IMG/VR virus record: IMGVR_UViG_3300034104_003795
Coordinates: 62,001-126,000 of that record
Reading direction: 5' to 3' (one strand)
DNA length: 64,000 nt
Part shown: positions 17,195 to 32,010 of the stretch, one piece after another
How the letters are laid out: every line of letters begins with the position of its first letter
Position numbering within the stretch: position 1 is the stretch's first letter
The notes under the pieces: model-generated
Told to the model about the DNA's origin: nothing
What the model saw: only the letters and a program-made list of their open reading frames with translations
Database searches by the model: none
Translations under genes and position numbers: made by a program

Positions 17195-17626
17195 CTATTT
17201 TGAATTTTCCAAATCTAAATTGGCAGTGTACCATTCTAATATTTCTTCACCTGCTATTATATCCCTAGTTGCAACTCCATCTGTTGTTATATTAATATTT
17301 TCTTCATTTGGATATGCCGAATTACAATACGATACCGAATGACAAATGAAATTTATCCCTTTAAACAATCTAAATAATTTATAACCACAATCTTCGTTTA
17401 TAAAATACATATCCAAAAGGTCTTGTACCCCTTCTGGTAAATTTTTTAATTTATCTTTGGGAAGCATATACACACCCGTTTCTCCATCCCATTGTGGAAA
17501 TACTTGCTCTCCTTTTTTTATATCTTTAATTGCAAATACACCTATCCCGTGAATTGGTGATGGTGCAATTTTGCTTTTCACATTCATTTCTAAATGGTCT
17601 ATAACCTTTTGTATATTTGTATTCAT
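17195..17626 (-). CDS. SET domain protein (putative lysine methyltransferase)
   Basis: PSPIHGIGVFAIKDIKKGE...ATRDIIAGEEILEWY. Confidence 0.8.
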   Translation of the reverse strand: MNTNIQKVIDHLEMNVKSKIAPSPIHGIGVFAIKDIKKGEQVFPQWDGETGVYMLPKDKLKNLPEGVQDLLDMYFINEDCGYKLFRLFKGINFICHSVSYCNSAYPNEENINITTDGVATRDIIAGEEILEWYTANLDLENSK

Positions 17627-21295: not shown

Positions 21296-22108
21296 TTATT
21301 TTTTACCAAAGTGAGATACTATGTGTTTTACTATTAAACTCATTTTATCTGCACTTTCATTTGCTACTCTTTGCACTTCTTCGTGCGTTATTTCTACTAT
21401 CTTACCTGCAACTCCTAAATCAGTAATCAAAGACATTGAGAATACTTTAACCCCCATATGTCTAGCAACTAATACTTCAGGTATAGTTGACATCCCAACT
21501 GCATCTCCACCTATTATACTCATATATCTATACTCTGCTGGCGTTTCATAGTTTGGACCGGATACTGCTATCAATACTCCTTCATGCGTTCTAATATCAA
21601 CTTCACATTGTTTCGCTACTTCAATCATTTCCTTATCATATGCCGCACTAACATCTAAAAAACGAGGTCCCATTGAATCATCATTTGGACCTAACAATGG
21701 ATTATCACCCATTAGATTAATATGGTCATTTACAAACATCACATCACCAATTTCAAAGTTAGGATTCATACCACCCGTTGCGTTGGATGTTATCAATCTT
21801 TCGATACCTAACATTTTCAGTATTCGTATTGGGTATGTAATTTCTTGCATTGTATATCCTTCGTAATAATGATTTCTACCCTGAAGTGCTACTACCGGTA
21901 CTCCATCAAGTGTACCAAATATTAAATTACCACTATGCCCTTCAATCGTTGGTGTGATAAAACCCGGAATATCTTTATATGGTATTGTAGCTGTAATATC
22001 TATATCGTTAGCCACATCACCTAATCCTGAACCCAATACCAATCCTATCTTTGGTCTAGTATATGTAAACTTATTAATGTAATTTAATGTTTCGTTATAT
22101 TGTGCCAT
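21296..22108 (-). CDS. punA: purine nucleoside phosphorylase (trimeric type)
   Basis: LGSGLG, GHSG, QGRNHYYEG, TNATGG, GPNYETPAE, VGMSTIPE. Confidence 0.92.
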   Translation of the reverse strand: MAQYNETLNYINKFTYTRPKIGLVLGSGLGDVANDIDITATIPYKDIPGFITPTIEGHSGNLIFGTLDGVPVVALQGRNHYYEGYTMQEITYPIRILKMLGIERLITSNATGGMNPNFEIGDVMFVNDHINLMGDNPLLGPNDDSMGPRFLDVSAAYDKEMIEVAKQCEVDIRTHEGVLIAVSGPNYETPAEYRYMSIIGGDAVGMSTIPEVLVARHMGVKVFSMSLITDLGVAGKIVEITHEEVQRVANESADKMSLIVKHIVSHFGKK

Positions 22109-22526
22109 TTGTTATTCTTTTTTTAATTTCGGTTGTACTGATTCCTCTGGTGTATGATAGGTAAACTAATACAATATCATTTTCATCCAGCCAATCCTGT
22201 GTGAATTGCATTTGTGTATAATAATCTTTCTTTGCCCAATCATCACCAATTGCTATGATATCAGGTTTAACTTGTAATATTGATGGTTTACTATCTGCAC
22301 CCCCGATGTTAGGAATAACCTCATCAACAAACTTACAAAACTCCAAAGACTTCTTTCGTTCTTCGTAAGTCATAATTGGTGGTTTACCTTTATAGTATTC
22401 AATAAACTCATCTGTGTTTAGTGATACTATTACTTTATCAGCTATTTTAGAACATTGTTTAAGAAAGTTCATGTGGCCATAATGTAATATGTCAAATGTT
22501 CCACCGGTGTATAATATTTTACTCAT
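22095..22526 (-). CDS. cytidylyltransferase (TagD/RfaE-like)
   Basis: YTGGTFDILHYGH (HxGH), IGDDW, Y..GISTT. Confidence 0.88.
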   Translation of the reverse strand: MSKILYTGGTFDILHYGHMNFLKQCSKIADKVIVSLNTDEFIEYYKGKPPIMTYEERKKSLEFCKFVDEVIPNIGGADSKPSILQVKPDIIAIGDDWAKKDYYTQMQFTQDWLDENDIVLVYLSYTRGISTTEIKKRITNGTI

Positions 22527-23214
22527 ATATTCGTTTAAAAGGTATATTTACTCTGTTTAATTCTGCTTCAATTTCTATTACATTATTTGTATGTAATCCA
22601 TCCCCACAATAATCCGTATATTTTCTAGTAGGAAGTTCTAATATAATTGAATTTTCTATTTGTTTTGTTTTATCATATAATTCATGTCCTAATAATATTT
22701 CAATAGATTCATTTCTTTCGAGAATTGGAAATAGATGATTTAATTTTTTAGGATTTATTGCAAGTGTACAAGCATTAACTTCATACGATGGTCTAGTTGC
22801 ATATGCAATTGGAGGCCACGGTGGTGCGGGCCAATCTCCACATGCTAAATCAAATGTATTATCTAAAAGAAATCTAATTGTTTCACCGCTTGTAAAAAAT
22901 GAATCTTCATCTAATATTAGAACTTTATCATATTCTCTAGTTAGAGCCTGTATTTTATTTATACCTTCAGTAAAGTAAAATCCATTTAATGTAGAACCTG
23001 CTGCAGATGTATTTCCAAAATTCCATTTCTTCTTATCAAAATAAATTGATACTCCTAATTCTAAAAACTTTGGTATGTATTGAATGTATTCGCTTATATC
23101 ATTATCATATAAAAAAAGACATCTTATATCAATATTAGGAAAAAGATGTCTCACCGATTGAACCGATAAATAAGTTCTATCAGTTCGTTTATAATCTTTA
23201 AAAAATACTATCAT
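22519..23214 (-). CDS. putative glycosyltransferase-like protein
   Basis: LILDED (DxD) motif; start trimmed to MIVFFKDY so it clears tRNA-Leu. Confidence 0.55.
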   Translation of the reverse strand: MIVFFKDYKRTDRTYLSVQSVRHLFPNIDIRCLFLYDNDISEYIQYIPKFLELGVSIYFDKKKWNFGNTSAAGSTLNGFYFTEGINKIQALTREYDKVLILDEDSFFTSGETIRFLLDNTFDLACGDWPAPPWPPIAYATRPSYEVNACTLAINPKKLNHLFPILERNESIEILLGHELYDKTKQIENSIILELPTRKYTDYCGDGLHTNNVIEIEAELNRVNIPFKRIYE

Positions 23215-23230
23215 ATTATTAAGTTGTTTG

Positions 23231-23311
23231 TGCCCCAAGAGAGATTCGAACTCTCACACCTCTCGATATCAGTTCCTAAAACTGATGTGTCTACCGTTCC
23301 ACCATCAGGGC
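23231..23311 (-). tRNA. tRNA-Leu(TAG)
   Basis: Cloverleaf, anticodon arm tcagt-ttTAGga-actga, long variable arm. Confidence 0.93.
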
Positions 23312-23839
23312 ATATTTTTGTAATGATTTTAAAAATAATTCAATTCCTTTGTTGTGATTAGCTTCCCAATCATCCGGATTACCGCTATCACTTACATATT
23401 TGTATGCAGTAAAATCAAATCCATAAATCTTACATACCTTTGCAATTGAGTATGCTTCCATATCACATATTACAGATGGTGTGGTTTGAAAATGGTCTTG
23501 TGTATAACATATATTATATCCCAATCCATTGAAATCAATATTACCCATCAATATTTCATTATCAAATGGTGTTTTTGTTTTATCTGCAAATGGTCTAGCG
23601 TCCATATCGTTTTGGACAAATGTTTTACACTTAAATAAACTACCAACCATAACGGCATGCCCACCCGCACTTCCGTAGTTTATAACTACTACATCTTTGG
23701 GGTCTAAATCTTTAAGAGTTTCAGTTGCTTTTATAGCCGCATTTACTTTTCCAACACCAGTATAAACAACTTTAACACCTTCCGGTGCTTTTTCCTTTGG
23801 AAACTCATTTTCTAATGCAACAAATAATATAACGTTCAT
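23291..23839 (-). CDS. mtnN: MTA/SAH nucleosidase-like phosphorylase
   Basis: TGVGKVNAA, INYGSAGG, Q.DMD, CDMEAY, KYVSD; last 21 nt run into tRNA-Leu. Confidence 0.8.
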   Translation of the reverse strand: MNVILFVALENEFPKEKAPEGVKVVYTGVGKVNAAIKATETLKDLDPKDVVVINYGSAGGHAVMVGSLFKCKTFVQNDMDARPFADKTKTPFDNEILMGNIDFNGLGYNICYTQDHFQTTPSVICDMEAYSIAKVCKIYGFDFTAYKYVSDSGNPDDWEANHNKGIELFLKSLQKYALMVER

Positions 23840-23850
23840 AACAATAAGTA

Positions 23851-24023
23851 TGCTGTTAGAGTAGGATTCGAACCATACAGGAGGAGATTCAAAAAGTAAC
23901 ATTTAGTGCTTGCAAGCTGGTGGTCAACCCCATATTACTTTTCTATTTCTTTATCCTCGCCCACGAGACGAGTGGGTGTGTTTGCCAGGTTATAACATAG
24001 ATAACCAATTTCACCATCTAACA
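23851..24023 (-). ncRNA. giant tRNA-like RNA (GTC anticodon, D-loop hairpin insertion, ~80 nt branched variable arm)
   Basis: Acceptor TGTTAGA/TCTAACA-G, D arm GTGAAATT..GGCAAACAC, anticodon arm cccac-tcGTCtc-gtggg, T loop GGTTCGAATCC. Confidence 0.75.
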
Positions 24024-24028
24024 ATTTT

Positions 24029-24115
24029 TGCGGAGAAACAGGGATTCGAACCCCAGAACCTGTTACAGTTGCCGGTTTTCAAGACCGGTGCATTCAACCA
24101 CTCTGCCATTTCTCC
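24029..24115 (-). tRNA. tRNA-Ser(TGA)
   Basis: ccggt-ctTGAaa-accgg, long variable arm. Confidence 0.93.
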
Positions 24116-24132
24116 GTTAAGTACTCTAATAA

Positions 24133-24396
24133 TTAGAATACTTTTTCTTCGCTTTTACCGTCTAAACTATTTTCGGTATCGGCATGCTTTCTTCTAGCTT
24201 CTTCTGCTTCTTTATATATTCTAACCCAAGTTAAGAATATATCTACTGGCGCTAATATCCAACACATAATCAATAGAGCCATAGAATCTAATCCAGGTGA
24301 AATACCTAATCCACCAGCCATTACATCTCTATTCCATTTTCGTATTGACATTATAACACAATAGATGAAACACATTACATAATAAGTAATAAACAT
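24133..24396 (-). CDS. small membrane protein
   Basis: Two hydrophobic segments, located between tRNAs. Confidence 0.65.
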   Translation of the reverse strand: MFITYYVMCFIYCVIMSIRKWNRDVMAGGLGISPGLDSMALLIMCWILAPVDIFLTWVRIYKEAEEARRKHADTENSLDGKSEEKVF

Positions 24397-24415
24397 AACA
24401 TTTGTTTTTAATGAG

Positions 24416-24487
24416 TTACCCGAACTGGACTCGAACCAATACGAACAGAATCAAAATCTGTGATGCTAACCATTACATCATCGGGCA
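24416..24487 (-). tRNA. tRNA-Gln(TTG)
   Basis: acaga-ttTTGat-tctgt. Confidence 0.9.
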
Positions 24488-24492
24488 ATAAT

Positions 24493-24565
24493 CTCAAGCA
24501 TTCTACTTCCCGCAGTGCGAAATTGTATCTTACTTAGCCCATCGCTAGCGGTATGGGTACTTGAG
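24493..24565 (-). ncRNA. candidate structured small RNA between tRNA-Gly and tRNA-Gln
   Basis: Closing stem CTCAAGTA/TGCTTGAG with internal CCCAT/ATGGG hairpin. Confidence 0.4.
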
Positions 24566-24623
24566 TTTTAGTAATTGAAAAACATCTATTCTTCTTGCGG
24601 CCTAATACTAACAGGCCCACTTG

Positions 24624-24696
24624 AGCGAGAGACCAGGCTCGAACTGGCCACCTGAAGCTTGGAAGGCTACCGCTCTACCAAATGAGCTACTCTCGC
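24624..24696 (-). tRNA. tRNA-Gly(TCC)
   Basis: Loop ctTCCaa; near-duplicate body of the adjacent Gly(GCC). Confidence 0.9.
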
Positions 24697-24751
24697 TAAA
24701 GAGTGTAGTGGAAGATATCATTCCTGCAGTTACTACACGTTTTATCTGCTT

Positions 24752-24827
24752 TGGAGCGGAAGACCAGGCTCGAACTGGCCACCCTGACCTTGGCAAGGTC
24801 ATGCTCTACCAAATGAGCTACTTCCGC
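24752..24827 (-). tRNA. tRNA-Gly(GCC)
   Basis: tgacc-ttGCCaa-ggtca, encoded CCA. Confidence 0.93.
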
Positions 24828-24884
24828 AATTAATAGGTGAGGCTATTACCATCATTAAGTCTTTAATGCTTTAGACACCTATTG

Positions 24885-24958
24885 TGGACCCACTTGGAAT
24901 CGAACCAAGCACCTAATGATTATGAGTCATTTGCTCTAACCGAATGAGCTATAGGTCC
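24885..24958 (-). tRNA. tRNA-Ile2(CAT, lysidine type)
   Basis: aatga-ctCATaa-tcatt, G1-C72 acceptor resembling ileX; the Ile2 versus Met assignment is inferred. Confidence 0.8.
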
Positions 24959-24962
24959 GATG

Positions 24963-25036
24963 TGGAGAAGAAGGGATTCGAACCCATGACCCCCTGCGTG
25001 CAAGGCAGGTGCTCTAGCCAACTGAGCTACTTCCCC
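24963..25036 (-). tRNA. tRNA-Ala(TGC)
   Basis: cctgc-ctTGCac-gcagg, G3.U70. Confidence 0.93.
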
Positions 25037-25047
25037 ATAAGTGAACG

Positions 25048-25133
25048 TACCGGGGATGGGATTCGAACCCACACGAGCGATTTCTGCTCAAAAGATTTTA
25101 AGTCTTTCATGTCTACCATTCCATCACCCCGGC
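25048..25133 (-). tRNA. tRNA-Leu(TAA)
   Basis: aaaga-ctTAAaa-tcttt, long variable arm. Confidence 0.93.
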
Positions 25134-25158
25134 GGCGATACTATTTTTAATAACTATA

Positions 25159-25190
25159 CAAAGATACGAATAATAATTTAATTATCCAAA
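25159..25190 (-). promoter_or_regulatory. Bacteroidota sigma-A type promoter internal to the tRNA array
   Basis: TTTG-N20-TATCTTTG. Confidence 0.75.
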
Positions 25191-25627
25191 TCCTTTTTTA
25201 TATTATATATTTTAACCCTTCTGATTTTAGTTCCACTCTCATCAGGATTAATTAATATATCAATTTTTTTTCTCCACCTCTTTGCCATCAAATCTCTGAC
25301 AGTATAAACACCATCTAATTTTCCAGCACCCTTCACTCTTACTTTTTGTCCAAACTTATACTTTCGTTTCAGGTCTCTACTAATCGCTATTACCTTTTGT
25401 TTCTTTGGATTAAGACTATCCAACTTATAACCACTTGCGGTAATTAAGGGAGTTGAATCGGTTTGGCCGGCGGATACCGTATATGTTGTAACCGTAACTA
25501 CATCATAAGGTATGTGTTTCTTTTCTATCATTATATCCGCAACTTCTTCCTCACTCATTTCGGAGTCAATCATATTATGTGGAATAAACATAATAACAGT
25601 TAAGAATAAAAGAATAACTTTTCTCAT
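25178..25627 (-). CDS. 3D domain (MltA-B/RlpA-like) cell-wall protein
   Basis: Signal peptide; VTTY..QTDSTP.ITASG, IAISRDL, FGQKV, VRD.M, IDILI. Confidence 0.85.
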   Translation of the reverse strand: MRKVILLFLTVIMFIPHNMIDSEMSEEEVADIMIEKKHIPYDVVTVTTYTVSAGQTDSTPLITASGYKLDSLNPKKQKVIAISRDLKRKYKFGQKVRVKGAGKLDGVYTVRDLMAKRWRKKIDILINPDESGTKIRRVKIYNIKKDLDN

Positions 25628-25645
25628 AACTTATTTTTTATTTAG

Positions 25646-25719
25646 TGATTCGGAAAGGATTCGAACCTTTGACCCCAAACTTAGAAGGTTTGTGCTCTAT
25701 CCAGCTGAGCTACCGAACC
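25646..25719 (-). tRNA. tRNA-Arg(TCT)
   Basis: caaac-ctTCTaa-gtttg. Confidence 0.93.
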
Positions 25720-25722
25720 ATA

Positions 25723-25821
25723 TAGTAAGAGAGATACTACGTCTAATATCTCAATGTTTCTACCGGCCGTCTATGGAATATGCGCACTGACCATAAACTA
25801 AACTTTCGTCTGCTCTTACTA
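25723..25821 (-). ncRNA. candidate multibranch small RNA between tRNA-Asp and tRNA-Arg
   Basis: 9 bp closing stem TAGTAAGAG/CTCTTACTA plus three internal hairpins. Confidence 0.45.
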
Positions 25822-25825
25822 CTTG

Positions 25826-25896
25826 CGGAAAGTACGGGAATCGAACCCGTCACATTGCCGTGACAAGGCAACATTATACCGATTAACTAACTCTCC
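25826..25896 (-). tRNA. tRNA-Asp(GTC)
   Basis: ttgcc-ttGTCac-ggcaa, G73. Confidence 0.9.
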
Positions 25897-25925
25897 AAAT
25901 TACATTATCGTTCTTTAACTAATTT

Positions 25926-26183
25926 TTATTTTTTATTGTTAGTTAATTTTTGTTCTAATTTATCCAATCTCGAATCTAATTGAGAAAAGATGTGATTTTC
26001 TAATTCATCTGCTCTACGATTAAAGTCAGTTTGATTTCTATCAACTTGACGATACAAATCTTCGCCGATGCTTTCTAATTCTTTTTCTATTTTTCTTGCC
26101 TTAACAAGCCCAATAACAGCAACTATCGACACTGCGATAACCACCACTACAGACATTCCTAAAACGAATGATAATATTTCCAT
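25926..26183 (-). CDS. membrane-anchored coiled-coil protein
   Basis: N-terminal TM helix plus ...SQLDSRLDKLE; flanked by 15 bp inverted repeat. Confidence 0.7.
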   Translation of the reverse strand: MEILSFVLGMSVVVVIAVSIVAVIGLVKARKIEKELESIGEDLYRQVDRNQTDFNRRADELENHIFSQLDSRLDKLEQKLTNNKK

Positions 26184-26220
26184 AATTTATTTCTCCTATA
26201 TGTCAAAGAACGATAATGTG

Positions 26221-26293
26221 AGCCCAAGACAAGAATCGAACTTGCGACCTACTGATTACAAATCAGTTGCTCTACCTGCTGAGCTACTCGGGC
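26221..26293 (-). tRNA. tRNA-Thr(TGT)
   Basis: actga-ttTGTaa-tcagt. Confidence 0.93.
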
Positions 26294-26297
26294 GTTT

Positions 26298-26391
26298 AGG
26301 AAAGTAGAAGATGGGTGCGTGGACATCTACTTTTATGATTGGCATTTCTAACCGATTTATGCATACTAATATGCTTATCCCAATCAACCTT
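26298..26391 (-). ncRNA. candidate structured small RNA between tRNA-Glu and tRNA-Thr
   Basis: TGATTGG/CCAATCA, GCATA/TATGC and AAAGTAG/CTACTTT stems. Confidence 0.35.
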
Positions 26392-26393
26392 TG

Positions 26394-26465
26394 TACTCTG
26401 TACGGGATTCGAACCCGTATTACATCCGTGAAAGGGATGTGACCTAACCCTTAGTCGAACAGAGC
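26394..26465 (-). tRNA. tRNA-Glu(TTC)
   Basis: catcc-ctTTCac-ggatg. Confidence 0.93.
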
Positions 26466-26483
26466 GTTAATGTTAATGTTATA

Positions 26484-26515
26484 CAAATATACGAATAATA
26501 TCTGATATAACCAAA
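26484..26515 (-). promoter_or_regulatory. Bacteroidota sigma-A type promoter internal to the tRNA array
   Basis: TTTG-N20-TATATTTG. Confidence 0.75.
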
Positions 26516-26521
26516 TCTATT

Positions 26522-26665
26522 TTAACAATAGGTTTTATATTTTTTTATACCACCTTTCAAACGTCTTATACATATCATACAAGCTCCGTTTTCTCTTATT
26601 ATTTTTCTTATTCGGTATAACTTATTACTTCGTCTATTAATTTCAAACTTATCATTTTTCATAAT
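26522..26665 (-). CDS. small basic hypothetical protein
   Basis: Start trimmed to approximately MKNDKFE to clear tRNA-Ser. Confidence 0.35.
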   Translation of the reverse strand: MMKNDKFEINRRSNKLYRIRKIIRENGACMICIRRLKGGIKKYKTYC

Positions 26666-26678
26666 GTCCAATTTAATG

Positions 26679-26767
26679 CGGAGAATGTTGGATTCGAACC
26701 AACGGTACAACTTTCATCGTACAACGGTTTAGCAAACCGGCCCCATCGTCCACTCGGGCAATTCTCC
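26679..26767 (-). tRNA. tRNA-Ser(GCT)
   Basis: Loop ttGCTaa, long variable arm. Confidence 0.9.
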
Positions 26768-26771
26768 GTTG

Positions 26772-26844
26772 GGGTGTAAGGACGGTATCGAACCGTCTTA
26801 TCTAGCTCCACAAACTAGCGCATCACCTTAATGCTTCAAACACC
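26772..26844 (-). tRNA. tRNA-His(GTG)
   Basis: ctagt-ttGTGga-gctag, G-1/C73. Confidence 0.9.
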
Positions 26845-26847
26845 ATT

Positions 26848-26919
26848 TGGTTGCGGGGCCAGGAATCGAACCTGAATATCTGGCTTATGAGACCAAACGG
26901 ATTACCTAATCTCCCCACA
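26848..26919 (-). tRNA. tRNA-Met(CAT) with shortened D arm
   Basis: TGTGGGG/CCCCGCA-A-CCA, loop ctCATaa, D arm only GATT-AGGT-AATC. Confidence 0.75.
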
Positions 26920-26927
26920 ATATCAAG

Positions 26928-26998
26928 AGGCGAGTACAAGATTCGAACTTGTGTAAAAGCTTTTGCAGAGCTCCATATAACCACTCTAACAACTCGCC
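26928..26998 (-). tRNA. tRNA-Cys(GCA)
   Basis: gagct-ctGCAaa-agctt, U73. Confidence 0.92.
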
Positions 26999-27004
26999 AT
27001 TTTG

Positions 27005-27077
27005 TAGCCCCTAAAGGATTCGAACCCATACTCCGAAGTCCGTAGCTTCGTGTGCTAATCCATTACACCAAAGAGCC
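27005..27077 (-). tRNA. tRNA-Arg(ACG)
   Basis: cgaag-ctACGga-cttcg. Confidence 0.92.
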
Positions 27078-27081
27078 ATAG

Positions 27082-27152
27082 CACCGGTGGAAGGACTCGA
27101 ACCCTCACAAACAGTTTTGGAGACTGGTATGCTACCATTACACTACACCGAT
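27082..27152 (-). tRNA. tRNA-Trp(CCA)
   Basis: Loop ctCCAaa, G73. Confidence 0.9.
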
Positions 27153-27158
27153 ATATTG

Positions 27159-27232
27159 TTGGAATAAAAAGAATCGAACTTTTAACCTTCCGCGTATCAG
27201 ACGGATGCTCTAACCAATTGAGCTATATTCCA
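27159..27232 (-). tRNA. tRNA-Ile(GAT)
   Basis: tccgt-ctGATac-gcgga. Confidence 0.9.
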
Positions 27233-27280
27233 ATTTTGCACTTCCTATTTCCCAATGCTGTGTAGTGCGAACCATATCGG

Positions 27281-27354
27281 TTGGGAATGCAGGATTCGAA
27301 CCTACGGCCTCTAGCTCCCAAAGCTAGCGCGATACCTGACTACGCTAATTCCCA
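27281..27354 (-). tRNA. tRNA-Pro(TGG)
   Basis: ctagc-ttTGGga-gctag. Confidence 0.92.
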
Positions 27355-27429
27355 ATGTGATAAGTTTCCATCCTATCGTATAATGTGTACATCATTATTT
27401 TAACTCAATATTAAGTTCGGAACTTTTTG

Positions 27430-27503
27430 TGACCCCTAATGGATTCGAACCATTGACTCCTATATTAAAAGTATAGTGCTCTAACCAACTGAGCTAAGAG
27501 GTC
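27430..27503 (-). tRNA. tRNA-Lys(TTT)
   Basis: ctata-ctTTTaa-tatag. Confidence 0.93.
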
Positions 27504-27543
27504 TGACTTTTGTCATACTTGTCACTTTCCATAGTATTTGTTT

Positions 27544-27753
27544 TTAATTGTTATCTTCTAATTCTATTTTACAATATTCGTCCAATGATATTTTATCAAA
27601 TGTTATCCATTGTCCATTTCCAAAATCTACTGCGAACTTACCATCTTCTGGTAGATACGCAGTTACTATTCCTTTACTACCCATTTCAATTTTTCCTTTT
27701 GGTGTCACCAACTCTTTTATTAATGTACCAACTCCATGATTAAAATCTGCCAT
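27544..27753 (-). CDS. small SH3/beta-barrel-like hypothetical protein
   Basis: 69 aa ORF between tRNAs. Confidence 0.65.
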   Translation of the reverse strand: MADFNHGVGTLIKELVTPKGKIEMGSKGIVTAYLPEDGKFAVDFGNGQWITFDKISLDEYCKIELEDNN

Positions 27754-27775
27754 AATTGTTTTTTTAATTGTTAAG

Positions 27776-27848
27776 TGGTAATGAGTGGTATCGAACCACT
27801 TCCTAAAGATTTTCAGTCTTTCGCTTCTACCTAGTTAGCTTCATCACC
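27776..27848 (-). tRNA. tRNA-Phe(GAA)
   Basis: aaaga-ctGAAaa-tcttt. Confidence 0.92.
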
Positions 27849-27852
27849 GGTG

Positions 27853-27934
27853 TTGGGGTAGACGGACTCGAACCGCCGAACTCAAATGAGAGCTGATTTA
27901 CAGTCAGCCGCAATTGCCACTATGCGATACCCCA
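27853..27934 (-). tRNA. tRNA-Tyr(GTA)
   Basis: gctga-ctGTAaa-tcagc, long variable arm. Confidence 0.93.
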
Positions 27935-27939
27935 ATGGC

Positions 27940-28033
27940 GTTCCATATAACTCACATTTGATAGCCCTATCGTGCTACTCACTCAATCCTACAACAGCTT
28001 TCAACTGAGAGATTGTAGGAATGTGTATGGAAC
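27940..28033 (-). ncRNA. candidate three-way-junction small RNA between tRNA-Val and tRNA-Tyr
   Basis: GTTCCATA/TATGGAAC, CACATT/AATGTG, CCTACAA/TTGTAGG, CAGTT-GAAA-GCTG. Confidence 0.45.
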
Positions 28034-28039
28034 ATGTTG

Positions 28040-28114
28040 TGGAAGTTACAGGATTCGAACCTATGACCCTCACGGTGTAAACGTGATGCTCTAAACCAAC
28101 TGAGCTAAACTTCC
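28040..28114 (-). tRNA. tRNA-Val(TAC)
   Basis: tcacg-ttTACac-cgtga. Confidence 0.93.
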
Positions 28115-28122
28115 TACTTATC

Positions 28123-28140
28123 CAATATGTCAAAGAACTT
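28123..28140 (-). promoter_or_regulatory. rrn boxA-like antitermination element
   Basis: AAGTTCTTTGACATATTG just after the first tRNA of the array; related copies at 26197-26211, 29536-29547, 30018-30029. Confidence 0.55.
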
Positions 28141-28147
28141 AATCTTG

Positions 28148-28219
28148 CGCTCCCTCTTGGATTCGAACCAAGGACCAACAGATTAACAGTCTGCTGCGCT
28201 ACCGCTGCGCCAAAGGAGC
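28148..28219 (-). tRNA. tRNA-Asn(GTT)
   Basis: gcaga-ctGTTaa-tctgt. Confidence 0.93.
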
Positions 28220-28221
28220 TT

Positions 28222-28262
28222 AAAACGAAAAAACCTCTAACCGATTTTATTCAGTTAGAGGT
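28222..28262 (-). terminator. intrinsic terminator / attenuator directly upstream of tRNA-Asn
   Basis: ACCTCTAACTG-aataaaat-CGGTTAGAGGT followed by TTTTTCGTTTT. Confidence 0.8.
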
Positions 28263-28288
28263 CTTTCTATTTAAGTTAAGTTATGTAA

Positions 28289-28450
28289 TTACCCAACATC
28301 AGTGTCCTCTAACTGCTTCGTACTAATATAATCCACCTTGCCTAAATTTAAGTTTGCCGGATTACTTAACGTACTAAACATACGAATCCCAGCCCACTCA
28401 TTTCTCAATGTAGGTTGCGAACAATTTGTATGTAGTGTTAAAGTTTTCAT
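28289..28450 (-). CDS. putative attenuator leader peptide (53 aa, all 20 amino acids)
   Basis: MKTLTLHTNCSQPTLRNEWAGIRMFSTLSNPANLNLGKVDYISTKQLEDTDVG; codons 46-49 (CAGTTAGAGG) are the exact complement of the terminator 5' arm. Confidence 0.65.
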   Translation of the reverse strand: MKTLTLHTNCSQPTLRNEWAGIRMFSTLSNPANLNLGKVDYISTKQLEDTDVG

Positions 28451-28600
28451 CACTGTTTGTTTATATAAGTATATAATAATTTTATTTTCCGAATCTTTGT
28501 TAGTTTTATCAGGCTTAAATTGGGGAACATATTGATATGCCCCCCTTTTCAAGTTGTAATAAAAATTAAGATATGAAACGAACAACTTTTCAGTTGTTAG

Positions 28601-28646
28601 TAGCTCTCTCTATTGGAATCGAACCAATATGCAACCATTGAGAAAG
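28601..28646 (-). ncRNA. tRNA-like minihelix (acceptor stem plus T arm, no anticodon arm)
   Basis: CTTTCTC/GAGAGAG stem, ATTGG-TTCGATT-CCAAT T arm, 11-nt linker containing TGG. Confidence 0.5.
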
Positions 28647-28659
28647 TAAAAACGCTGAG

Positions 28660-29520
28660 AATATACGTTGGGATAACTAGCTTTAGAAAGATTATTTTGT
28701 TTCCTTTCGTTTCCACATCCTTTTGAGATGTACCAGTCAATGCAGGTTATTATAGATTAACCACTCTTAAAGTTGTAACTTACTCACCTATTACTCCCCT
28801 TATTCAATCCTGCCGAACTGATTAAACCTTGCGGGTCTATAAGCTTTTCGTAGATATCACATTCGCCTTGCGGGCGTTTGTGGCTGGGAACAACTCCCAA
28901 CTATGTATGCACCTTTCGGTCACAACTGATGAACACTTTTGCTTTTATTTATAATTGAATAATCAAATCCGCATTTGATAAAAGTTTTGGTTCGTAGATG
29001 GATTCAGGTAGCGGTTCACCACTAGCTCTGTCCCCTTTTGAAGAACAGAATACTATACTACCCGATGCGTTATCTCAACGCCATACTTCAAGTCATCTTC
29101 ATTAATAGGGATTGGTGTCCCATATTAAAGGATAGTAACGGCACCACCCGTACACAGTCTTATCTTACGTCCTTTCGGATAGCTTGATTGTCAAGACCAC
29201 TTTGGTATTGAATCACGCAATAATAAAAAGGGATTAGCTTTCTATTTCTTACAATAATCCTATGAGTTATTCTTATCGTTCTTCCGAACTCAACTGAACA
29301 ATCTACAATTGCTCAGTCACCCAAACTCTTCTGCTACAGTGTTACCCTCACATACAAAGCCCAAATGATATCTCACTTGCCTACTCAAGCTCATAACCTT
29401 ACAGGGATATGAACCGCAAAATGCTTAACCAAACATTTCACTTTATCCTACTTTCGTAGTTTATTTAATGACCATAGGCGGCCATTTTGTACACTATATA
29501 ACACGAAGTTATTATGTGTA
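28660..29520 (-). ncRNA. large structured ncRNA, GOLLD-like (~860 nt)
   Basis: No minus-strand ORF >=60 aa in the track, higher GC, many GNRA-capped hairpins (CTAC-GAAA-GTAG, TCC-GAAA-GGA, ACC-GAAA-GGT, two GCAA loops), own promoter, next to phage tRNA cluster; family name not confirmed by a covariance search. Confidence 0.7.
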
Positions 29521-29564
29521 AATTATTTCAATAATGTAAAGAACTTTGTTATTTGATAACTTTA

Positions 29565-29596
29565 TAAAGATACGAAATCTTTTTCAAACTACCAAA
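29565..29596 (-). promoter_or_regulatory. Bacteroidota-type promoter (array unit 1; drives the GOLLD-like RNA)
   Basis: TTTGGTAGTTTGAAAAAGATTTCG-TATCTTTA. Confidence 0.8.
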
Positions 29597-29606
29597 TTTA
29601 TTTTTA

Positions 29607-29663
29607 AAGATTCTCAATTTTGTTTTCTGGTCAAACCAATCAACTACTTTATTTTTGAATCTT
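29607..29663 (-). ncRNA. candidate small RNA 1 of the promoter array
   Basis: Starts just after its promoter; ends pair (AAGATTC/GAATCTT). Confidence 0.45.
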
Positions 29664-29665
29664 CA

Positions 29666-29697
29666 TAAAGATACGATAATTTTTTCAAACTACCAAA
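29666..29697 (-). promoter_or_regulatory. Bacteroidota-type promoter (array unit 2)
   Basis: TTTG-N20-TATCTTTA. Confidence 0.8.
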
Positions 29698-29708
29698 TCT
29701 TTTTTTAA

Positions 29709-29791
29709 AAGTTATTAAGGTATCCGGCTTTATTAGGAGCTTGCGCCCCTCACACAATCGGTTTTATTATTGTTGGCTTCAACCTTAACTT
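29709..29791 (-). ncRNA. candidate small RNA 2 of the promoter array
   Basis: Closing stem AAGTTAAGG/CCTTAATAACTT; internal GGGGC-GCAA-GCTCC GNRA hairpin. Confidence 0.55.
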
Positions 29792-29794
29792 TGT

Positions 29795-29826
29795 TAAAGA
29801 TACGAAAGTTTTTTCAAACTACCAAA
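29795..29826 (-). promoter_or_regulatory. Bacteroidota-type promoter (array unit 3)
   Basis: TTTG-N20-TATCTTTA. Confidence 0.8.
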
Positions 29827-29836
29827 TCTTTTTTTA

Positions 29837-29934
29837 AATCTATTATAATGGGGTTGGGTTGTACCCTTTTCAATCTGCTTTCACACCCATCACTCCCAAA
29901 GAGCTGTCAGTATCAGATACCACTATTATAGATT
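29837..29934 (-). ncRNA. candidate small RNA 3 (co-transcribed after tRNA-fMet)
   Basis: Long closing stem AATCTATAATAGTGG/CCATTATAATAGATT. Confidence 0.5.
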
Positions 29935-29937
29935 TTG

Positions 29938-30009
29938 TTGCGAGGGATGGATTCGAACCACCGGCCTCCAGGTTATGAGCCTGGCGAGCTACCACTGCTC
30001 TACCTCACG
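29938..30009 (-). tRNA. tRNA-fMet(CAT), initiator
   Basis: C1:A72 mismatch, ccagg-ctCATaa-cctgg. Confidence 0.9.
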
Positions 30010-30030
30010 ATATTATTTTAAAGAACTTTG

Positions 30031-30062
30031 TAAAGATAGTACATTTTTTTGAAACGGCCAAA
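30031..30062 (-). promoter_or_regulatory. Bacteroidota-type promoter for tRNA-fMet
   Basis: TTTG-N20-TATCTTTA followed by a boxA-like element. Confidence 0.75.
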
Positions 30063-30093
30063 TCTTTTTTTCAAAATGTGGATAACTTTTTTA

Positions 30094-30118
30094 ATTCATT
30101 GATTATCAATGAGTTACG
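30094..30118. repeat. palindromic repeat copy
   Basis: attcattgattatcaatgagttacg. Confidence 0.7.
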
Positions 30119-30142
30119 CACATAAGAATTTATAAGTATATG

Positions 30143-30174
30143 TAAATATACAAAAAATATACGAATCCGCCAAA
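30143..30174 (-). promoter_or_regulatory. Bacteroidota-type promoter
   Basis: TTTG-N20-TATATTTA. Confidence 0.65.
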
Positions 30175-30181
30175 TTTATTT

Positions 30182-30457
30182 TTAAACTAATGCGTTCAGC
30201 TTATTAAGTACCAATTCTCTTACTGAATTAAAAAGTTCTTCCGTATCAGTTTGGAATAATGGCGCCGAACCAACCGGTCTATCACTACCGGATATTTCAG
30301 ACATTGCGTGTTCATATACAGCTCTAAATGCCATTGGGTCTTTTGTATATGCAATAGCAGAGTTATCAACTCTGGATGAATTAGTAATTGAAATTATCGT
30401 TTTTTCTTCATCATCAAAGCAGATATGGCTTTCGCCGGTTACAACATAAGTTTTCAT
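30182..30457 (-). CDS. hypothetical protein
   Basis: 91 aa ORF. Confidence 0.7.
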   Translation of the reverse strand: MKTYVVTGESHICFDDEEKTIISITNSSRVDNSAIAYTKDPMAFRAVYEHAMSEISGSDRPVGSAPLFQTDTEELFNSVRELVLNKLNALV

Positions 30458-30475
30458 AATATATTAATTAATTTT

Positions 30476-31069
30476 TTAACAATAGTATTCTACTGCATAA
30501 GTATATAAAGGTTCACCACTCCATATTGGATTTACTTCTGCATATCTTTGGTATCCAGCTGGGTCACATCCCCAATAGATGATATTTCCGCGAATCGGAC
30601 TATATACTGCTTTATAAGTAGTTTTCCAATAATTACCCCATCCAAAATGATTCCATAAGAAAGTAATTCTATCATCCATTCTAGCAGGAGCCGCAGGACC
30701 ATTAGAACCATCGCCACCATTAGATGCGTCATGCCAAGGGCCTATATTATAAAAATACCATCTCTCACTCCACTCAGCTGCACCATACACATTATATTTG
30801 TAAAGTCTGATACTGCAACTCGCTTGGCTTTCATATTTGAATATGTAAACGTATGGTCTACTTGCACTATGCGTATATCCCCACCAATGAGAAAATGCAT
30901 ATCCACTCTGCCCATTGGCAGTTGGTCTATAACTACTTGCATCATTTATACCACCATAACTACCATTTCTAGCGTCCCATATGGTAAAGTATCCACCTCT
31001 ATTGAATTCGGTATTTATATCGGATGCTGCGATTGTACCGCCTACTATATATCGTAACCTATCTGGCAT
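30476..31069 (-). CDS. putative virion/tail-associated protein
   Basis: GTIAASDINTEFNR..YAFSHWWGYTHS N-terminal motif typical of tail-fibre-associated modules; rich in Gly and aromatic residues. Confidence 0.45.
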   Translation of the reverse strand: MPDRLRYIVGGTIAASDINTEFNRGGYFTIWDARNGSYGGINDASSYRPTANGQSGYAFSHWWGYTHSASRPYVYIFKYESQASCSIRLYKYNVYGAAEWSERWYFYNIGPWHDASNGGDGSNGPAAPARMDDRITFLWNHFGWGNYWKTTYKAVYSPIRGNIIYWGCDPAGYQRYAEVNPIWSGEPLYTYAVEYYC

Positions 31070-31072
31070 ATC

Positions 31073-31798
31073 TTATTTAGATTTTTGCATAATCTTTACC
31101 AATGACATTGCACTCTTTTTAACAGGAGCATCATCTTGATATCTAAGCGCAGATTGTACTTTTATATCTCTACCGGTTTCAGGATTTCTTACAGTTTTAT
31201 TAAGAATATCCTTTGGTAACATTTTGATTAATTTATCATCTCTTTCTGCAGATGATCCTGGTAAATTTTGTAAATTTCTTTGTGTACCTTTTTTTCTTTG
31301 AAATGCGAAAACTTGTTTGGTATTTCTCATTTTTGAATATGCTTGCTGCATTGTACCAGGATGCATATCCCCAACACTTTCTACTCTACCATTTTTATAA
31401 ACCAAAACACCTTTACCTTTGGTATCTTCGCCACCATACAAAACTGAATCCTGTGTGAATTCATTTCCTAATTGGTGAATATCTTTAATTGAAATGTTTG
31501 GAACGAATAAGGAAATTTCGGTTGAATCAACTAATTTATCTTTTGGACAATCAAAATAGTTTACTCTATTATCTTGACACTCTTGCCAATGACCTTCCAT
31601 CTCAAAAAATCCTAATCCTTTAGCTCTTATTTTATCCGCTAATATTTTGTTAGCCGCTTTATTTTCAGCAGGAGTATTTGCATATCTATAAGCAGTTATA
31701 ACTCCCCAACTTTTTACCTTCTTTTTACCTTGAACGTGTTGGAGAACCCTACCCAGTGAGGCTTCAGTTAGTTGTGCTATTTTACATCCTTTTTCCAT
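31073..31798 (-). CDS. conserved phage protein (DUF3293-like) with C-terminal NPETGRDIKVQSAL module
   Basis: E.SLGRV.QH, ITAYR, N...N..L, GHWQE, QDSVL. Confidence 0.6.
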   Translation of the reverse strand: MEKGCKIAQLTEASLGRVLQHVQGKKKVKSWGVITAYRYANTPAENKAANKILADKIRAKGLGFFEMEGHWQECQDNRVNYFDCPKDKLVDSTEISLFVPNISIKDIHQLGNEFTQDSVLYGGEDTKGKGVLVYKNGRVESVGDMHPGTMQQAYSKMRNTKQVFAFQRKKGTQRNLQNLPGSSAERDDKLIKMLPKDILNKTVRNPETGRDIKVQSALRYQDDAPVKKSAMSLVKIMQKSK

Positions 31799-32010
31799 TC
31801 CTTATATATTTCATTAGATAAATATATAGAATCGTGGAAATGAATCTTTTCCTGAACCTTTGCTAGCTTTTCTTTTAAAGAATCAAGTTTGGTTTGTCTA
31901 GCCCATTTTCCCATATTATTTACAGGTGGATAGGCTTCCCAATATGCAAGTTGTTCTTGCAATTCTTTTTCCCTAATCTTTAGCTTTACTATTTTCTCAT
32001 TTATTTCCAT
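31777..32010 (-). CDS. coiled-coil hypothetical protein
   Basis: First gene after promoter 32018-32049. Confidence 0.65.
   Translation of the reverse strand: MEINEKIVKLKIREKELQEQLAYWEAYPPVNNMGKWARQTKLDSLKEKLAKVQEKIHFHDSIYLSNEIYKEWKKDVK

What the first reader, a model, noticed from the sequence alone, without database searches (positions are those of the whole stretch)
28222..28472. Candidate universal tRNA-depletion attenuator controlling the phage tRNA array
Seen in the sequence: (i) an intrinsic terminator (11 bp stem plus T tract, 28222-28262) ends a few nt before the first tRNA (Asn); (ii) 27 nt upstream, a 53-codon ORF ends (28450->28289); (iii) its codons 46-49, CAGTTAGAGG (28306-28315), are the perfect 10-nt complement of the terminator 5' arm CCTCTAACTG (28252-28261), so the two pairings exclude each other; (iv) the peptide has 17 different amino acids in its first 25 codons and all 20 by Tyr41, just ahead of the antiterminator; (v) its codons sample both Leu boxes (TTA/TTG, CTA), both Ser boxes (TCG, AGT), both Arg boxes (AGA, CGT) and both Gly isoacceptors (GGG, GGC), which covers 25 of the 26 tRNA species in the array (only AUA/Ile2 is missing), and many are G/C-ending codons atypical of this AT-rich genome. 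Established: trp/his-type attenuators work by ribosome stalling in a leader but sense one or a few amino acids, and host anti-phage effectors (anticodon nucleases such as PrrC, RloC and PARIS) destroy tRNAs. Inference: a stall at any codon from 1 to about 41 frees the antiterminator and switches on the phage tRNAs, making this a general translation-stress sensor tied to a tRNA rescue kit. I know of no described phage system like it. Caveat: internal promoters at 26484 and 25159 can feed the left half of the array independently.
Basis: partly seen in the sequence, partly recalled or inferred. Interest (0 to 1): 0.92.

Follow-up and report, generated by a model that had tools for sequence, protein, structure and literature searches.

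The report
All-20-amino-acid leader controlling phage tRNAs
A 53-codon mini-gene that uses every one of the 20 amino acids sits in front of a transcription stop signal and a 25-tRNA gene array in a large freshwater phage, and its conservation in over 150 relatives indicates a switch that turns the phage's tRNA genes on when translation falters.

Summary
Comparison with relatives gives the interpretation strong support.

- **Family size:** About 97 related loci and 158 protein clusters carry the same short ORF, 38-53 codons long.
- **Context:** A hairpin plus T-tract terminator always follows the ORF, and a tRNA gene (almost always tRNA-Asn) follows the terminator. A GOLLD RNA lies upstream in all 24 relatives tested and in the window.
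- **Composition:** 55 of 57 and 107 of 110 distinct peptides contain all 20 amino acids. Some reach all 20 within 28 codons. A tree-aware neutral simulation expects 8.6 of 57.
- **Peptide drift:** The peptide sequence itself drifts almost neutrally, and lost singleton residues reappear at other positions.
- **Alternative pairing:** The ORF segment complementary to the terminator's 5' arm covaries with it in four sequence classes.
- **Geometry:** That segment ends 11-17 nt before the stop codon, and the last new amino acid sits about 13 nt upstream of it.

This is best read as a ribosome-mediated transcription attenuator with a pan-amino-acid leader. It is a new variant of a known mechanism, and I found no description of it in the literature.

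Still untested: translation of the ORF, termination, and the natural trigger (defence nucleases versus feedback on tRNA supply). Matching at the level of individual tRNA species is not conserved.

The parts
28465..28473 (-). Promoter-like motif TATACTTAT, 15-23 nt upstream of the leader ATG.
   Evidence: There are 5 copies in the window. All lie on the gene strand. Four lie in intergenic DNA upstream of a gene or the tRNA-Met; the copy at 30497-30505 lies in the last codons of the 197-aa ORF, about 40 nt upstream of the next gene's start. A similar TATA(C/T)TTAT block precedes the ATG in all relatives. Promoter function is inferred.
28289..28450 (-). Leader ORF of 53 codons plus TAA. It contains all 20 amino acids by codon 41.
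   Evidence: The ORF is intact in every related locus that is not cut by a contig end. Its start context is A-rich at -12 to -10, like the phage's other genes.
28378..28433 (-). Conserved stem inside the ORF. ACAUAC (28433-28428, codons 6-8) pairs with GUAUGU (28383-28378, codons 23-25).
   Evidence: RNAalifold predicts it in both the long and the short families. It is kept in 26 of 26 and 11 of 11 sequences, with only one-sided G-U changes. Its role is unknown.
28322..28374 (-). Internal hairpin specific to the long family, about codons 26-43. It includes the nearly invariant block TTAGGCAAGGTGGATTATATT.
   Evidence: One pair covaries (AU in 18 sequences, GC in 7). The whole segment is deleted in the short family. 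A role as a transcription pause signal is speculation.
28306..28315 (-). Antiterminator strand CAGTTAGAGG (codons 46-49). It ends 14 nt before the stop codon.
   Evidence: It is a perfect 10-nt complement of 28261-28252. The helix covaries across 59 distinct sequences. It is the minimum-energy fold of the nascent RNA before the 3' arm is transcribed.
28228..28261 (-). Intrinsic terminator: 5' arm 28261-28251, loop, 3' arm 28244-28234, T6 at 28233-28228.
   Evidence: A stem of 8-11 bp followed by at least five T is present in all 66 distinct sequences with enough downstream DNA to score. The stem covaries.
23230..28219 (-). Regulated target: an array of 25 tRNA genes that starts with tRNA-Asn(GTT) 8 nt after the T tract. 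It also holds three small protein genes.
   Evidence: The same gene order (Asn Val Tyr Phe Lys Pro Ile Trp Arg Cys ...) is seen in relatives.
28652..29065 (-). Context: conserved 3' domain of a GOLLD RNA. A tRNA-Met lies at 29937-30009 upstream of it.
   Evidence: Rfam RF02032 scores 306.8 bits, E = 1e-87. GOLLD lies upstream of the leader in 24 of 24 relatives tested.

Best explanation
This is a ribosome-mediated transcription attenuator placed between a promoter and the phage's tRNA gene array.

Proposed mechanism:
1. RNA polymerase transcribes a 53-codon leader ORF, then a terminator, then the tRNAs.
2. A 10-nt segment near the end of the ORF can pair with the terminator's 5' arm. When it does, the terminator hairpin cannot form.
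3. If a ribosome translates the leader smoothly, it sits on or next to that segment (codons 46-49, 14 nt before the stop) while the terminator is being made. The terminator then forms and the tRNA genes stay off.
4. If the ribosome stalls earlier, or never loads, the segment is free. It pairs with the 5' arm and transcription reads through into the tRNA genes.

The leader contains all 20 amino acids upstream of that segment. A shortage of any charged tRNA can therefore cause a stall, so the element reports overall decoding capacity.

Status of each step:
- Shown by sequence comparison: the ORF, the two mutually exclusive helices, their covariation, the fixed geometry and the selected all-20 composition.
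- Inferred: that the ORF is translated, that termination occurs, and the direction of the switch.
- Open: whether the natural trigger is tRNA destruction by host defence, host shut-off, or plain negative feedback on phage tRNA supply.
For: **1. Conservation.**
- The ORF, terminator and complementarity are present in 4 independent arrays.
- They are also present in about 97 loci from viral and metagenome contigs.
- A profile search finds 158 protein clusters, all named only 'hypothetical protein'.

**2. All-20 composition.**
- 55 of 57 distinct peptides contain all 20 amino acids, as do 107 of 110 in the protein database.
- Short variants complete the set within 28-31 codons.
- Chance rates in this phage's own proteins: 4.3% at 53 aa, 0.4-0.7% at 39-41 aa, and 0 of 11,726 windows at 28 aa.
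- A neutral simulation on the family tree gives 8.6 +/- 7.7 of 57 leaves with all 20 (maximum 38 in 1000 runs). The observed number is 55.
- Compensation is seen. Cys moves between positions 10, 17 and 20. The short family deleted the segment holding the only Tyr, the first Val and the first Asp, and has these amino acids at other positions.

**3. The peptide sequence is close to neutral.**
- Variable sites by codon position are 37/38/40.
- Nonsynonymous to synonymous codon differences are about 3.7 to 1.
- Even so, no variant carries an internal stop. That is the pattern expected of a leader, not of a working protein.

**4. Antiterminator helix.**
- 90.6% of cells are paired, against 20-54% when the partner columns are slid.
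- Five pairs change on both sides, and 0 of 500 shuffles reach the observed covariation score.
- In the core pairs there are no unpaired cells (0-2), apart from the outermost pair 34/96 (10 of 59): U-A in 44, C-G in 12 and U-G in 3 sequences; A-U in 37 and G-C in 20.
- The encoded residues change (LE, LR, SG, LG) while the pairing is kept.
- The terminator helix covaries in the same way.

**5. Geometry.**
- The segment ends 11-17 nt (mode 14) before the stop codon.
- The stop codon lies 23-37 nt before the 5' arm.
- The codon of the last new amino acid lies a median of 13 nt upstream of the segment.

**6. Energetics.** The antiterminator is the minimum-energy fold of the nascent RNA at -13 to -22 kcal/mol. 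The terminator is -16 to -22 kcal/mol.

**7. Target.** A tRNA gene follows the T tract directly. It is tRNA-Asn in 21 of the 22 loci scanned, and also in L008-L010.

**8. Start context.** It matches the phage's other genes, with no Shine-Dalgarno motif and A-rich positions -12 to -10.
Against: - **No direct evidence.** There is no experiment, transcript data or ribosome footprint, and no cultured phage or host.
- **One codon per rare amino acid.** Several amino acids occur once per leader (3-12 singletons). Classical attenuators use runs of regulatory codons to gain sensitivity (subject of PMC1183508, abstract listed). This design should therefore respond mainly to severe shortage.
- **Some residues lie too close to the antiterminator.** In some short variants the last unique residue lies only 6-11 nt from the antiterminator. 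In L087 it lies inside it. Not every amino acid can be sensed in every variant.
- **Isoacceptor matching is imperfect.**
  - CGN codons are absent from 23 of 61 leaders although tRNA-Arg(ACG) is present.
  - L010 has a GGC codon but no tRNA-Gly(GCC).
- **No anti-antiterminator.** No conserved structure was found that would hold the antiterminator in the absence of ribosomes. The ribosome-free state is therefore predicted to be 'on', unlike trp.
- **Unexplained RNA-level conservation.** Blocks of the ORF are invariant even at synonymous sites, which the model does not account for.
- **Terminator scan.** The simple scan did not flag the hairpin.
Confidence: 0.72

Rival explanations
1. General translation-status sensor. 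The element is an attenuator as described, but it reports only whether ribosomes are loading and moving at all, for example during host shut-off, ribosome shortage or drug action. The all-20 content would be a side effect or serve another purpose.
For: No conserved structure masks the antiterminator when ribosomes are absent, so any failure of translation gives readthrough. Known drug-responsive leader attenuators work this way, for example bmrB-bmrCD (PMC4191407, listed). Single codons give low sensitivity to mild starvation.
Against: It gives no reason for the strong selection on composition: 55 of 57 against 8.6 expected, with singleton residues regained after deletion. It also gives no reason why the last new amino acid sits just upstream of the antiterminator.
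Confidence: 0.13
2. RNA-only switch. The terminator and antiterminator alternative is real, but it is set by a trans factor (a protein, a tRNA as in T-box elements, or the neighbouring GOLLD RNA). The ORF would not be translated.
For: Parts of the ORF are invariant at synonymous sites and form conserved stems. GOLLD is always adjacent, and ends 38 nt before the ATG in L100 and L107.
Against: An untranslated RNA would not keep an ATG-to-stop frame free of stops across more than 150 variants while changing at all three codon positions. It would not keep indels in multiples of three. It would not keep all 20 amino acids. No T-box or other Rfam cis-regulatory family matches 28222-28472 at E <= 1. 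The only hit there is a chance-level sRNA match (NsiR1, 23 bits, E 0.53).
Confidence: 0.08
3. Ordinary small protein gene with its own terminator. The peptide would have a function of its own, and the complementarity and composition would be incidental.
For: The ORF is conserved, has a gene-like start context, and is called as a gene by metagenome annotators.
Against: Substitutions are spread evenly over codon positions, and nonsynonymous changes dominate. There is no Pfam family. The C-terminal residues change with the RNA pairing. A terminator ending 8 nt before a tRNA gene leaves no room for a separate tRNA promoter. The all-20 composition remains unexplained.
Confidence: 0.05

Closest known systems
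Leader-peptide transcription attenuators of amino-acid operons (trpL, hisL, leuL, thrL, ilvL, pheL) and of pheST (pheM), as established in enterobacteria (from my own knowledge)
   Same: A short leader ORF, an intrinsic terminator before the regulated genes, a mutually exclusive antiterminator, and ribosome position deciding which helix forms. The terminator is about as stable as or more stable than the antiterminator.
   Different: There is no run of one or a few regulatory codons. Instead, all 20 amino acids appear, mostly once or twice each. The antiterminator strand lies inside the ORF, upstream of the stop codon, not downstream of it. No 1:2-type anti-antiterminator was found. The regulated genes are tRNAs, not biosynthetic enzymes. 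The element is phage-encoded, probably in a host without Shine-Dalgarno-led initiation. No Rfam leader family matches.
Drug-responsive ribosome-mediated attenuators (bmrB-bmrCD PMC4191407; mef/mel PMC4335068; hflXr PMC6310831)
   Same: Ribosome stalling in a leader ORF relieves a downstream terminator. They respond to translation stress, not to one amino acid.
   Different: Those leaders have no compositional design and control efflux or ribosome-rescue genes. This one samples all 20 amino acids and controls tRNA genes.
T-box riboswitches (from my own knowledge)
   Same: They link tRNA charging status to readthrough of a terminator by stabilising an antiterminator.
   Different: A T-box binds one specific uncharged tRNA directly, with no ribosome and no ORF. 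Each senses a single amino acid. No T-box match was found here.
GOLLD RNA (Rfam RF02032) and its tRNA-island context
   Same: The element lies directly 3' of a GOLLD RNA. GOLLD is known to lie near tRNA islands and downstream of tRNA-Met (bioRxiv 10.1101/2024.12.08.627333; PMC6582537).
   Different: The leader lies outside the GOLLD model. It is absent where GOLLD is followed directly by a tRNA, as in Acinetobacter phage Herod and the huge phage LR756502. No leader ORF was found near GOLLD in LR745206 either. The two GOLLD papers I read do not mention a leader ORF.

Membership tests
Ribosome-mediated (leader-peptide) transcription attenuator | A short ORF lies in the transcribed leader upstream of the regulated genes. 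| tested here: met
   A 53-codon ORF at 28450-28289. It is intact in about 97 loci and has a gene-like start context.
Ribosome-mediated (leader-peptide) transcription attenuator | An intrinsic terminator lies between the leader ORF and the regulated genes. | tested here: met
   An 11-bp stem plus T6 ends 8 nt before tRNA-Asn. It is present in all 66 sequences with enough downstream DNA to score and covaries.
Ribosome-mediated (leader-peptide) transcription attenuator | A mutually exclusive antiterminator helix shares one strand with the terminator. | tested here: met
   A complement of 7-11 nt in every scored locus. 90.6% of cells are paired, 5 pairs change on both sides, and slid controls give 20-54%. 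It is the minimum-energy fold of the nascent RNA.
Ribosome-mediated (leader-peptide) transcription attenuator | Ribosome position relative to the antiterminator strand is constrained. | tested here: met
   The segment ends 11-17 nt before the stop. The stop lies 23-37 nt before the 5' arm. The last new amino acid lies a median of 13 nt upstream of the segment.
Ribosome-mediated (leader-peptide) transcription attenuator | Regulatory codons are enriched for the amino acid or acids linked to the regulated genes. | tested here: not met
   There is no run of any codon. The leader instead holds all 20 amino acids, with 3-12 singletons per peptide. This is the feature that makes it a new variant.
Ribosome-mediated (leader-peptide) transcription attenuator | Readthrough depends on translation of the leader and rises when the ribosome stalls. 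| not testable with these tools
   This needs reporter, in vitro or infection transcript data.
Rfam leader and attenuator families (for example His, Trp, Thr and Leu leaders) and T-box | A covariance-model match. | tested here: not met
   cmscan of 22000-32000 at E <= 1 shows only a chance-level NsiR1 hit (23 bits, E 0.53) at 28226-28278, and no leader or T-box family.
GOLLD RNA (RF02032), the neighbouring element | A covariance-model score above the gathering threshold (150 bits). | tested here: met
   306.8 bits at 28652-29065. The finding's coordinates lie 180 nt or more 3' of the model's end, so the leader is not part of the curated family.
Known protein families for the 53-aa product | A Pfam match. 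| tested here: not met
   No family at E <= 0.001. Database homologues are all named 'hypothetical protein'.

The most novel reading that the evidence does not exclude
A phage-encoded pan-aminoacyl-tRNA sensor. One leader peptide tests the cell's ability to decode all 20 amino acids, and switches on a near-complete phage tRNA set whenever any of them fails. This would give either homeostatic control of viral tRNA supply or an inducible rescue kit against host tRNA-cleaving defences. It may work in concert with the adjacent GOLLD RNA and, in relatives, a phage tmRNA.
Probability: 0.55. Interest if true: 0.92.

Novelty: new variant of a known kind. Interest (0 to 1): 0.9.

Why it matters
**A new kind of attenuator input and output.** Attenuators are textbook devices, but each known one senses one or a few amino acids and controls enzymes. 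A leader under selection to contain all 20 amino acids, placed before tRNA genes, would be the first attenuator that reads overall decoding capacity and regulates tRNA supply.

**Regulation of phage tRNA arrays.** Why phages carry tRNA arrays is actively debated (codon bias, host shut-off, escape from tRNA-cleaving defences). This element suggests the arrays are conditionally expressed.

**A lead on GOLLD.** GOLLD has a solved nanocage structure but no known function. This element is the first conserved regulatory neighbour described for it.

**A compact test object.** The sequence family gives 38-53-codon elements that can be moved into reporters.

Tried and rejected
1. **Terminator and promoter scan.** It did not report the hairpin, so I relied on folding and covariation. 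It also gave no more promoter-like sites than shuffles did, so it says nothing about promoters.
2. **Phage GenBank collection.** It holds no close relative. Hits were tRNAs and GOLLD only.
3. **Neighbour gene 30476-31069 as an anchor.** It gave one relative, but that contig ends before the leader.
4. **Homologues of the 149-aa array gene, L012-L016.** They have no tRNAs or GOLLD nearby, so they were not informative.
5. **A cultured example.** Acinetobacter phage Herod and the huge phages LR756502 and LR745206 have GOLLD. In Herod and LR756502 a tRNA follows it directly. None of the three has an all-20 small ORF in the right place. The leader is lineage-specific.
6. **Host assignment through a large protein.** It gave only 36-39% matches to a Microcystis phage and an uncultured phage. 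I rejected this as a host call.
7. **A conserved anti-antiterminator.** The pairing of codons 3-5 with the antiterminator in the single-sequence fold is not recovered by RNAalifold in either family.
8. **Conserved codon-to-isoacceptor matching.** It holds for the Leu, Ser and Gly boxes (56-59 of 61) but fails for Arg CGN (38 of 61).
9. **Enrichment of G-ending and U-ending wobble codons.** It is real, but it is confounded by shared ancestry and by RNA stems, so it is not used as evidence.
10. **Literature.** Six full-text searches found no description of such a leader.

Full report
**1. The observation**

Genes in this window run on the minus strand.

- The ORF starts at ATG 28450 and ends at TAA 28291-28289 (53 codons).
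- The hairpin has a 5' arm CCTCTAACTGA at 28261-28251 and a 3' arm TCGGTTAGAGG at 28244-28234, followed by T6 at 28233-28228.
- tRNA-Asn starts at 28219.
- CAGTTAGAGG at 28315-28306 is the exact complement of the 5' arm.
- The peptide has 17 kinds of residue in 25 codons and all 20 by Tyr41.
- Read against the ARAGORN list, its codons cover every elongator anticodon in the array, including both Leu, Ser, Arg and Gly species. ATA is absent.
- The region folds better than all 200 shuffles (z = -4.7), with the terminator in the minimum-energy structure.

For this window alone, a 10-nt complement has a chance of 4e-4. All 20 amino acids in 53 residues is not rare: 4.3% of windows of the phage's own proteins, and 5 of 298 small ORFs. 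The simple terminator scan did not list the hairpin.

**2. Surroundings**

- Rfam places the conserved 3' domain of a GOLLD RNA at 28652-29065 (306.8 bits). A tRNA-Met lies upstream at 29937-30009. The candidate leader therefore sits between GOLLD and a 25-tRNA array.
- The window is part of a 274-kb viral contig with about 31-35% G+C outside the tRNA array.
- Its genes lack Shine-Dalgarno motifs (4 of 74, background 7.7%). They have A-rich positions -12 to -10. From my own knowledge this resembles Bacteroidota initiation, and the leader's ATG shares that context.
- A motif TATACTTAT lies 15-23 nt upstream of the ATG. It occurs five times in the window, always on the gene strand. Four copies are in intergenic DNA ahead of a gene or the tRNA-Met; the fifth lies at the end of the 197-aa ORF just ahead of the next start. 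It may be a phage promoter element.

**3. Relatives**

- Anchoring on genes inside the array gave three independent contigs with the same layout.
- The alignment shows the ORF with the same start and stop, indels only in multiples of three, the terminator and the complementary segment.
- Searching with the peptide alignment gave 17 viral and 80 metagenome loci.
- A profile search of the protein database gave 158 clusters, all unnamed.
- GOLLD lies upstream in 24 of 24 relatives tested. A phage tmRNA lies further upstream in many.
- A tRNA follows the T tract directly. It is tRNA-Asn in all but two of the loci scanned for tRNAs: L011, where tRNA-Tyr comes first, and L100, which has a roughly 400-nt insertion.
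- GOLLD loci in Acinetobacter phage Herod and in two huge phages have no such ORF. The leader belongs to one freshwater phage lineage.

**4. The composition is selected**

- 55 of 57 distinct peptides from the loci contain all 20 amino acids. So do 107 of 110 distinct core peptides from the protein database.
- A short branch (38-41 codons) completes the set within 28-31 codons. No window of 28 residues in this phage's proteins does so (0 of 11,726; 1.75e-5 under independent draws).
- The short branch lacks the 15-codon segment that supplies the only Tyr, the first Val and the first Asp in the long branch. It has these residues at new positions.
- Cys moves among positions 10, 17 and 20.
- A neutral simulation along the family tree predicts 8.6 +/- 7.7 of 57 leaves with all 20 (maximum 38 in 1000 runs). 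The observed number is 55.
- Apart from composition, the peptide is nearly unconstrained. Variable sites are 37/38/40 by codon position, and nonsynonymous codon differences outnumber synonymous ones about 3.7 to 1.

An ORF that stays open and keeps its amino-acid set while its sequence drifts is what a sensing leader predicts. A working protein or an untranslated RNA does not predict it.

**5. The alternative pairing is selected**

Across 59 distinct sequences:
- The ORF segment and the 5' arm are paired in 90.6% of cells, against 20-54% when the partners are slid.
- Five pairs change on both sides, and no shuffle reaches the observed covariation score.
- Four sequence classes exist: GTTAGAGG/CCTCTAAC, GTTAAGGG/CCCTTAAC, GTCAGGG/CCCTGAC and GTTAGGG/CCCTAAC. 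The encoded residues change with them (LE, LR, SG, LG).
- The terminator helix covaries too. It often uses G-U where the antiterminator uses Watson-Crick pairs.
- Before the 3' arm exists, the antiterminator is the minimum-energy fold of the nascent RNA at -13 to -22 kcal/mol. The terminator is -16 to -22 kcal/mol.

**6. Geometry**

- The segment ends 11-17 nt (mode 14) before the stop codon.
- The stop lies 23-37 nt before the 5' arm.
- The codon of the last new amino acid lies a median of 13 nt upstream of the segment.

By inference from typical ribosome footprints:
- A ribosome paused on any sensing codon leaves the segment free.
- A ribosome on the last codons or the stop covers part of it.
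- A ribosome at the stop does not reach the terminator.

**7. Mechanism and its limits**

The best reading is ribosome-mediated attenuation. Smooth translation gives termination. A stall at any of the 20 amino acids, or no translation, gives readthrough into the tRNA genes.

Limits:
- There are no expression data.
- Single codons should make the element respond mainly to severe shortage.
- A few short variants place the last unique residue too close to, or inside, the antiterminator.
- Arg CGN codons are missing from 23 of 61 leaders although tRNA-Arg(ACG) is present. The design works at the level of amino acids, not isoacceptors.
- No conserved anti-antiterminator was found.
- Two conserved stems inside the ORF remain unexplained.
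- Whether the trigger is host tRNA cleavage, host shut-off or feedback on phage tRNA supply cannot be decided here.

**8. Comparison and novelty**

The element works like trp/his-type attenuators, and like the drug-responsive leader attenuators. It fails the one classical feature of amino-acid-specific regulatory codons, it controls tRNA genes, and it matches no Rfam leader or T-box family. Six full-text searches and two GOLLD papers gave no prior description. I rate it a new variant of a known kind, of high interest.

Noticed in passing
window 28652-29065 (-), probably extending towards 29900: A GOLLD RNA (Rfam RF02032, 306.8 bits) lies between tRNA-Met (29937-30009) and the leader. No ORF of 60 aa or more lies in 28600-29930, which fits a large noncoding RNA whose variable 5' domain is not covered by the model.
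   Followed up: partly
window 28597-28625 (-); L008 6704-6775; L025 2519-2590; L026 2781-2852; L030 2611-2684: Just after the GOLLD 3' domain the window keeps only a T-arm-like remnant (GGTTCGATTCC...). Relatives have a whole tRNA-Gly (TCC or ACC) or an odd tRNA-like gene at that spot.
   Followed up: partly
L019 757-1127; L028 396-770; L030 988-1350; L033 143-517; L066 991-1387; L101 876-1247: Many relatives encode a phage tmRNA just upstream of the tRNA-Met and GOLLD. Its long tag ends in ...AFVG(M/A)DYAVAA. None was found in this window.
   Followed up: no
window 28465, 30132, 30497, 56720, 58110 (all - strand): The motif TATACTTAT, often preceded by an A-rich stretch, recurs on the gene strand. 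Four copies are in intergenic DNA upstream of a gene or tRNA-Met; the one at 30497 overlaps the end of the preceding ORF. It may be a phage promoter element.
   Followed up: partly
window, 74 minus-strand genes: There are no Shine-Dalgarno motifs (4 of 74). A is strongly enriched at -12 to -10, and A or G at -3. This points to a host with Bacteroidota-style initiation.
   Followed up: partly
window 28540-28600 (-): Between GOLLD and the leader there are two hairpins with compensatory changes in relatives. One is AACAACT-GAAA-AGTTGTT followed by a T-rich run, possibly the GOLLD terminator. The other is a GGGGGG...CCCC stem.
   Followed up: partly
window 17626-19161 (-): A 511-aa gene with a full-length tryptophan halogenase domain (PF04820, E = 7e-89), which is unusual cargo for a phage.
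   Followed up: no
window 27544-27753, 25178-25627, 23291-23902 (-): Protein genes sit inside the tRNA array. The 69-aa and 149-aa ones are conserved in relatives, and the 203-aa one has a phosphorylase-superfamily domain.
   Followed up: no
L019 5428-5512; L030 4959-5043; L101 5105-5189: ARAGORN calls a tRNA-Ser with anticodon ACT in several relatives, where others have GCT.
   Followed up: no
leader ORFs of all loci: Leaders use far more G-ending codons than phage genes do (GTG 0.71 against 0.12, CCG 0.64 against 0.12, GAG 0.57 against 0.21). They use only the U-ending codon for His, Tyr and Cys. This could raise sensitivity through wobble decoding, or it could merely reflect RNA stems and shared ancestry.
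   Followed up: partly
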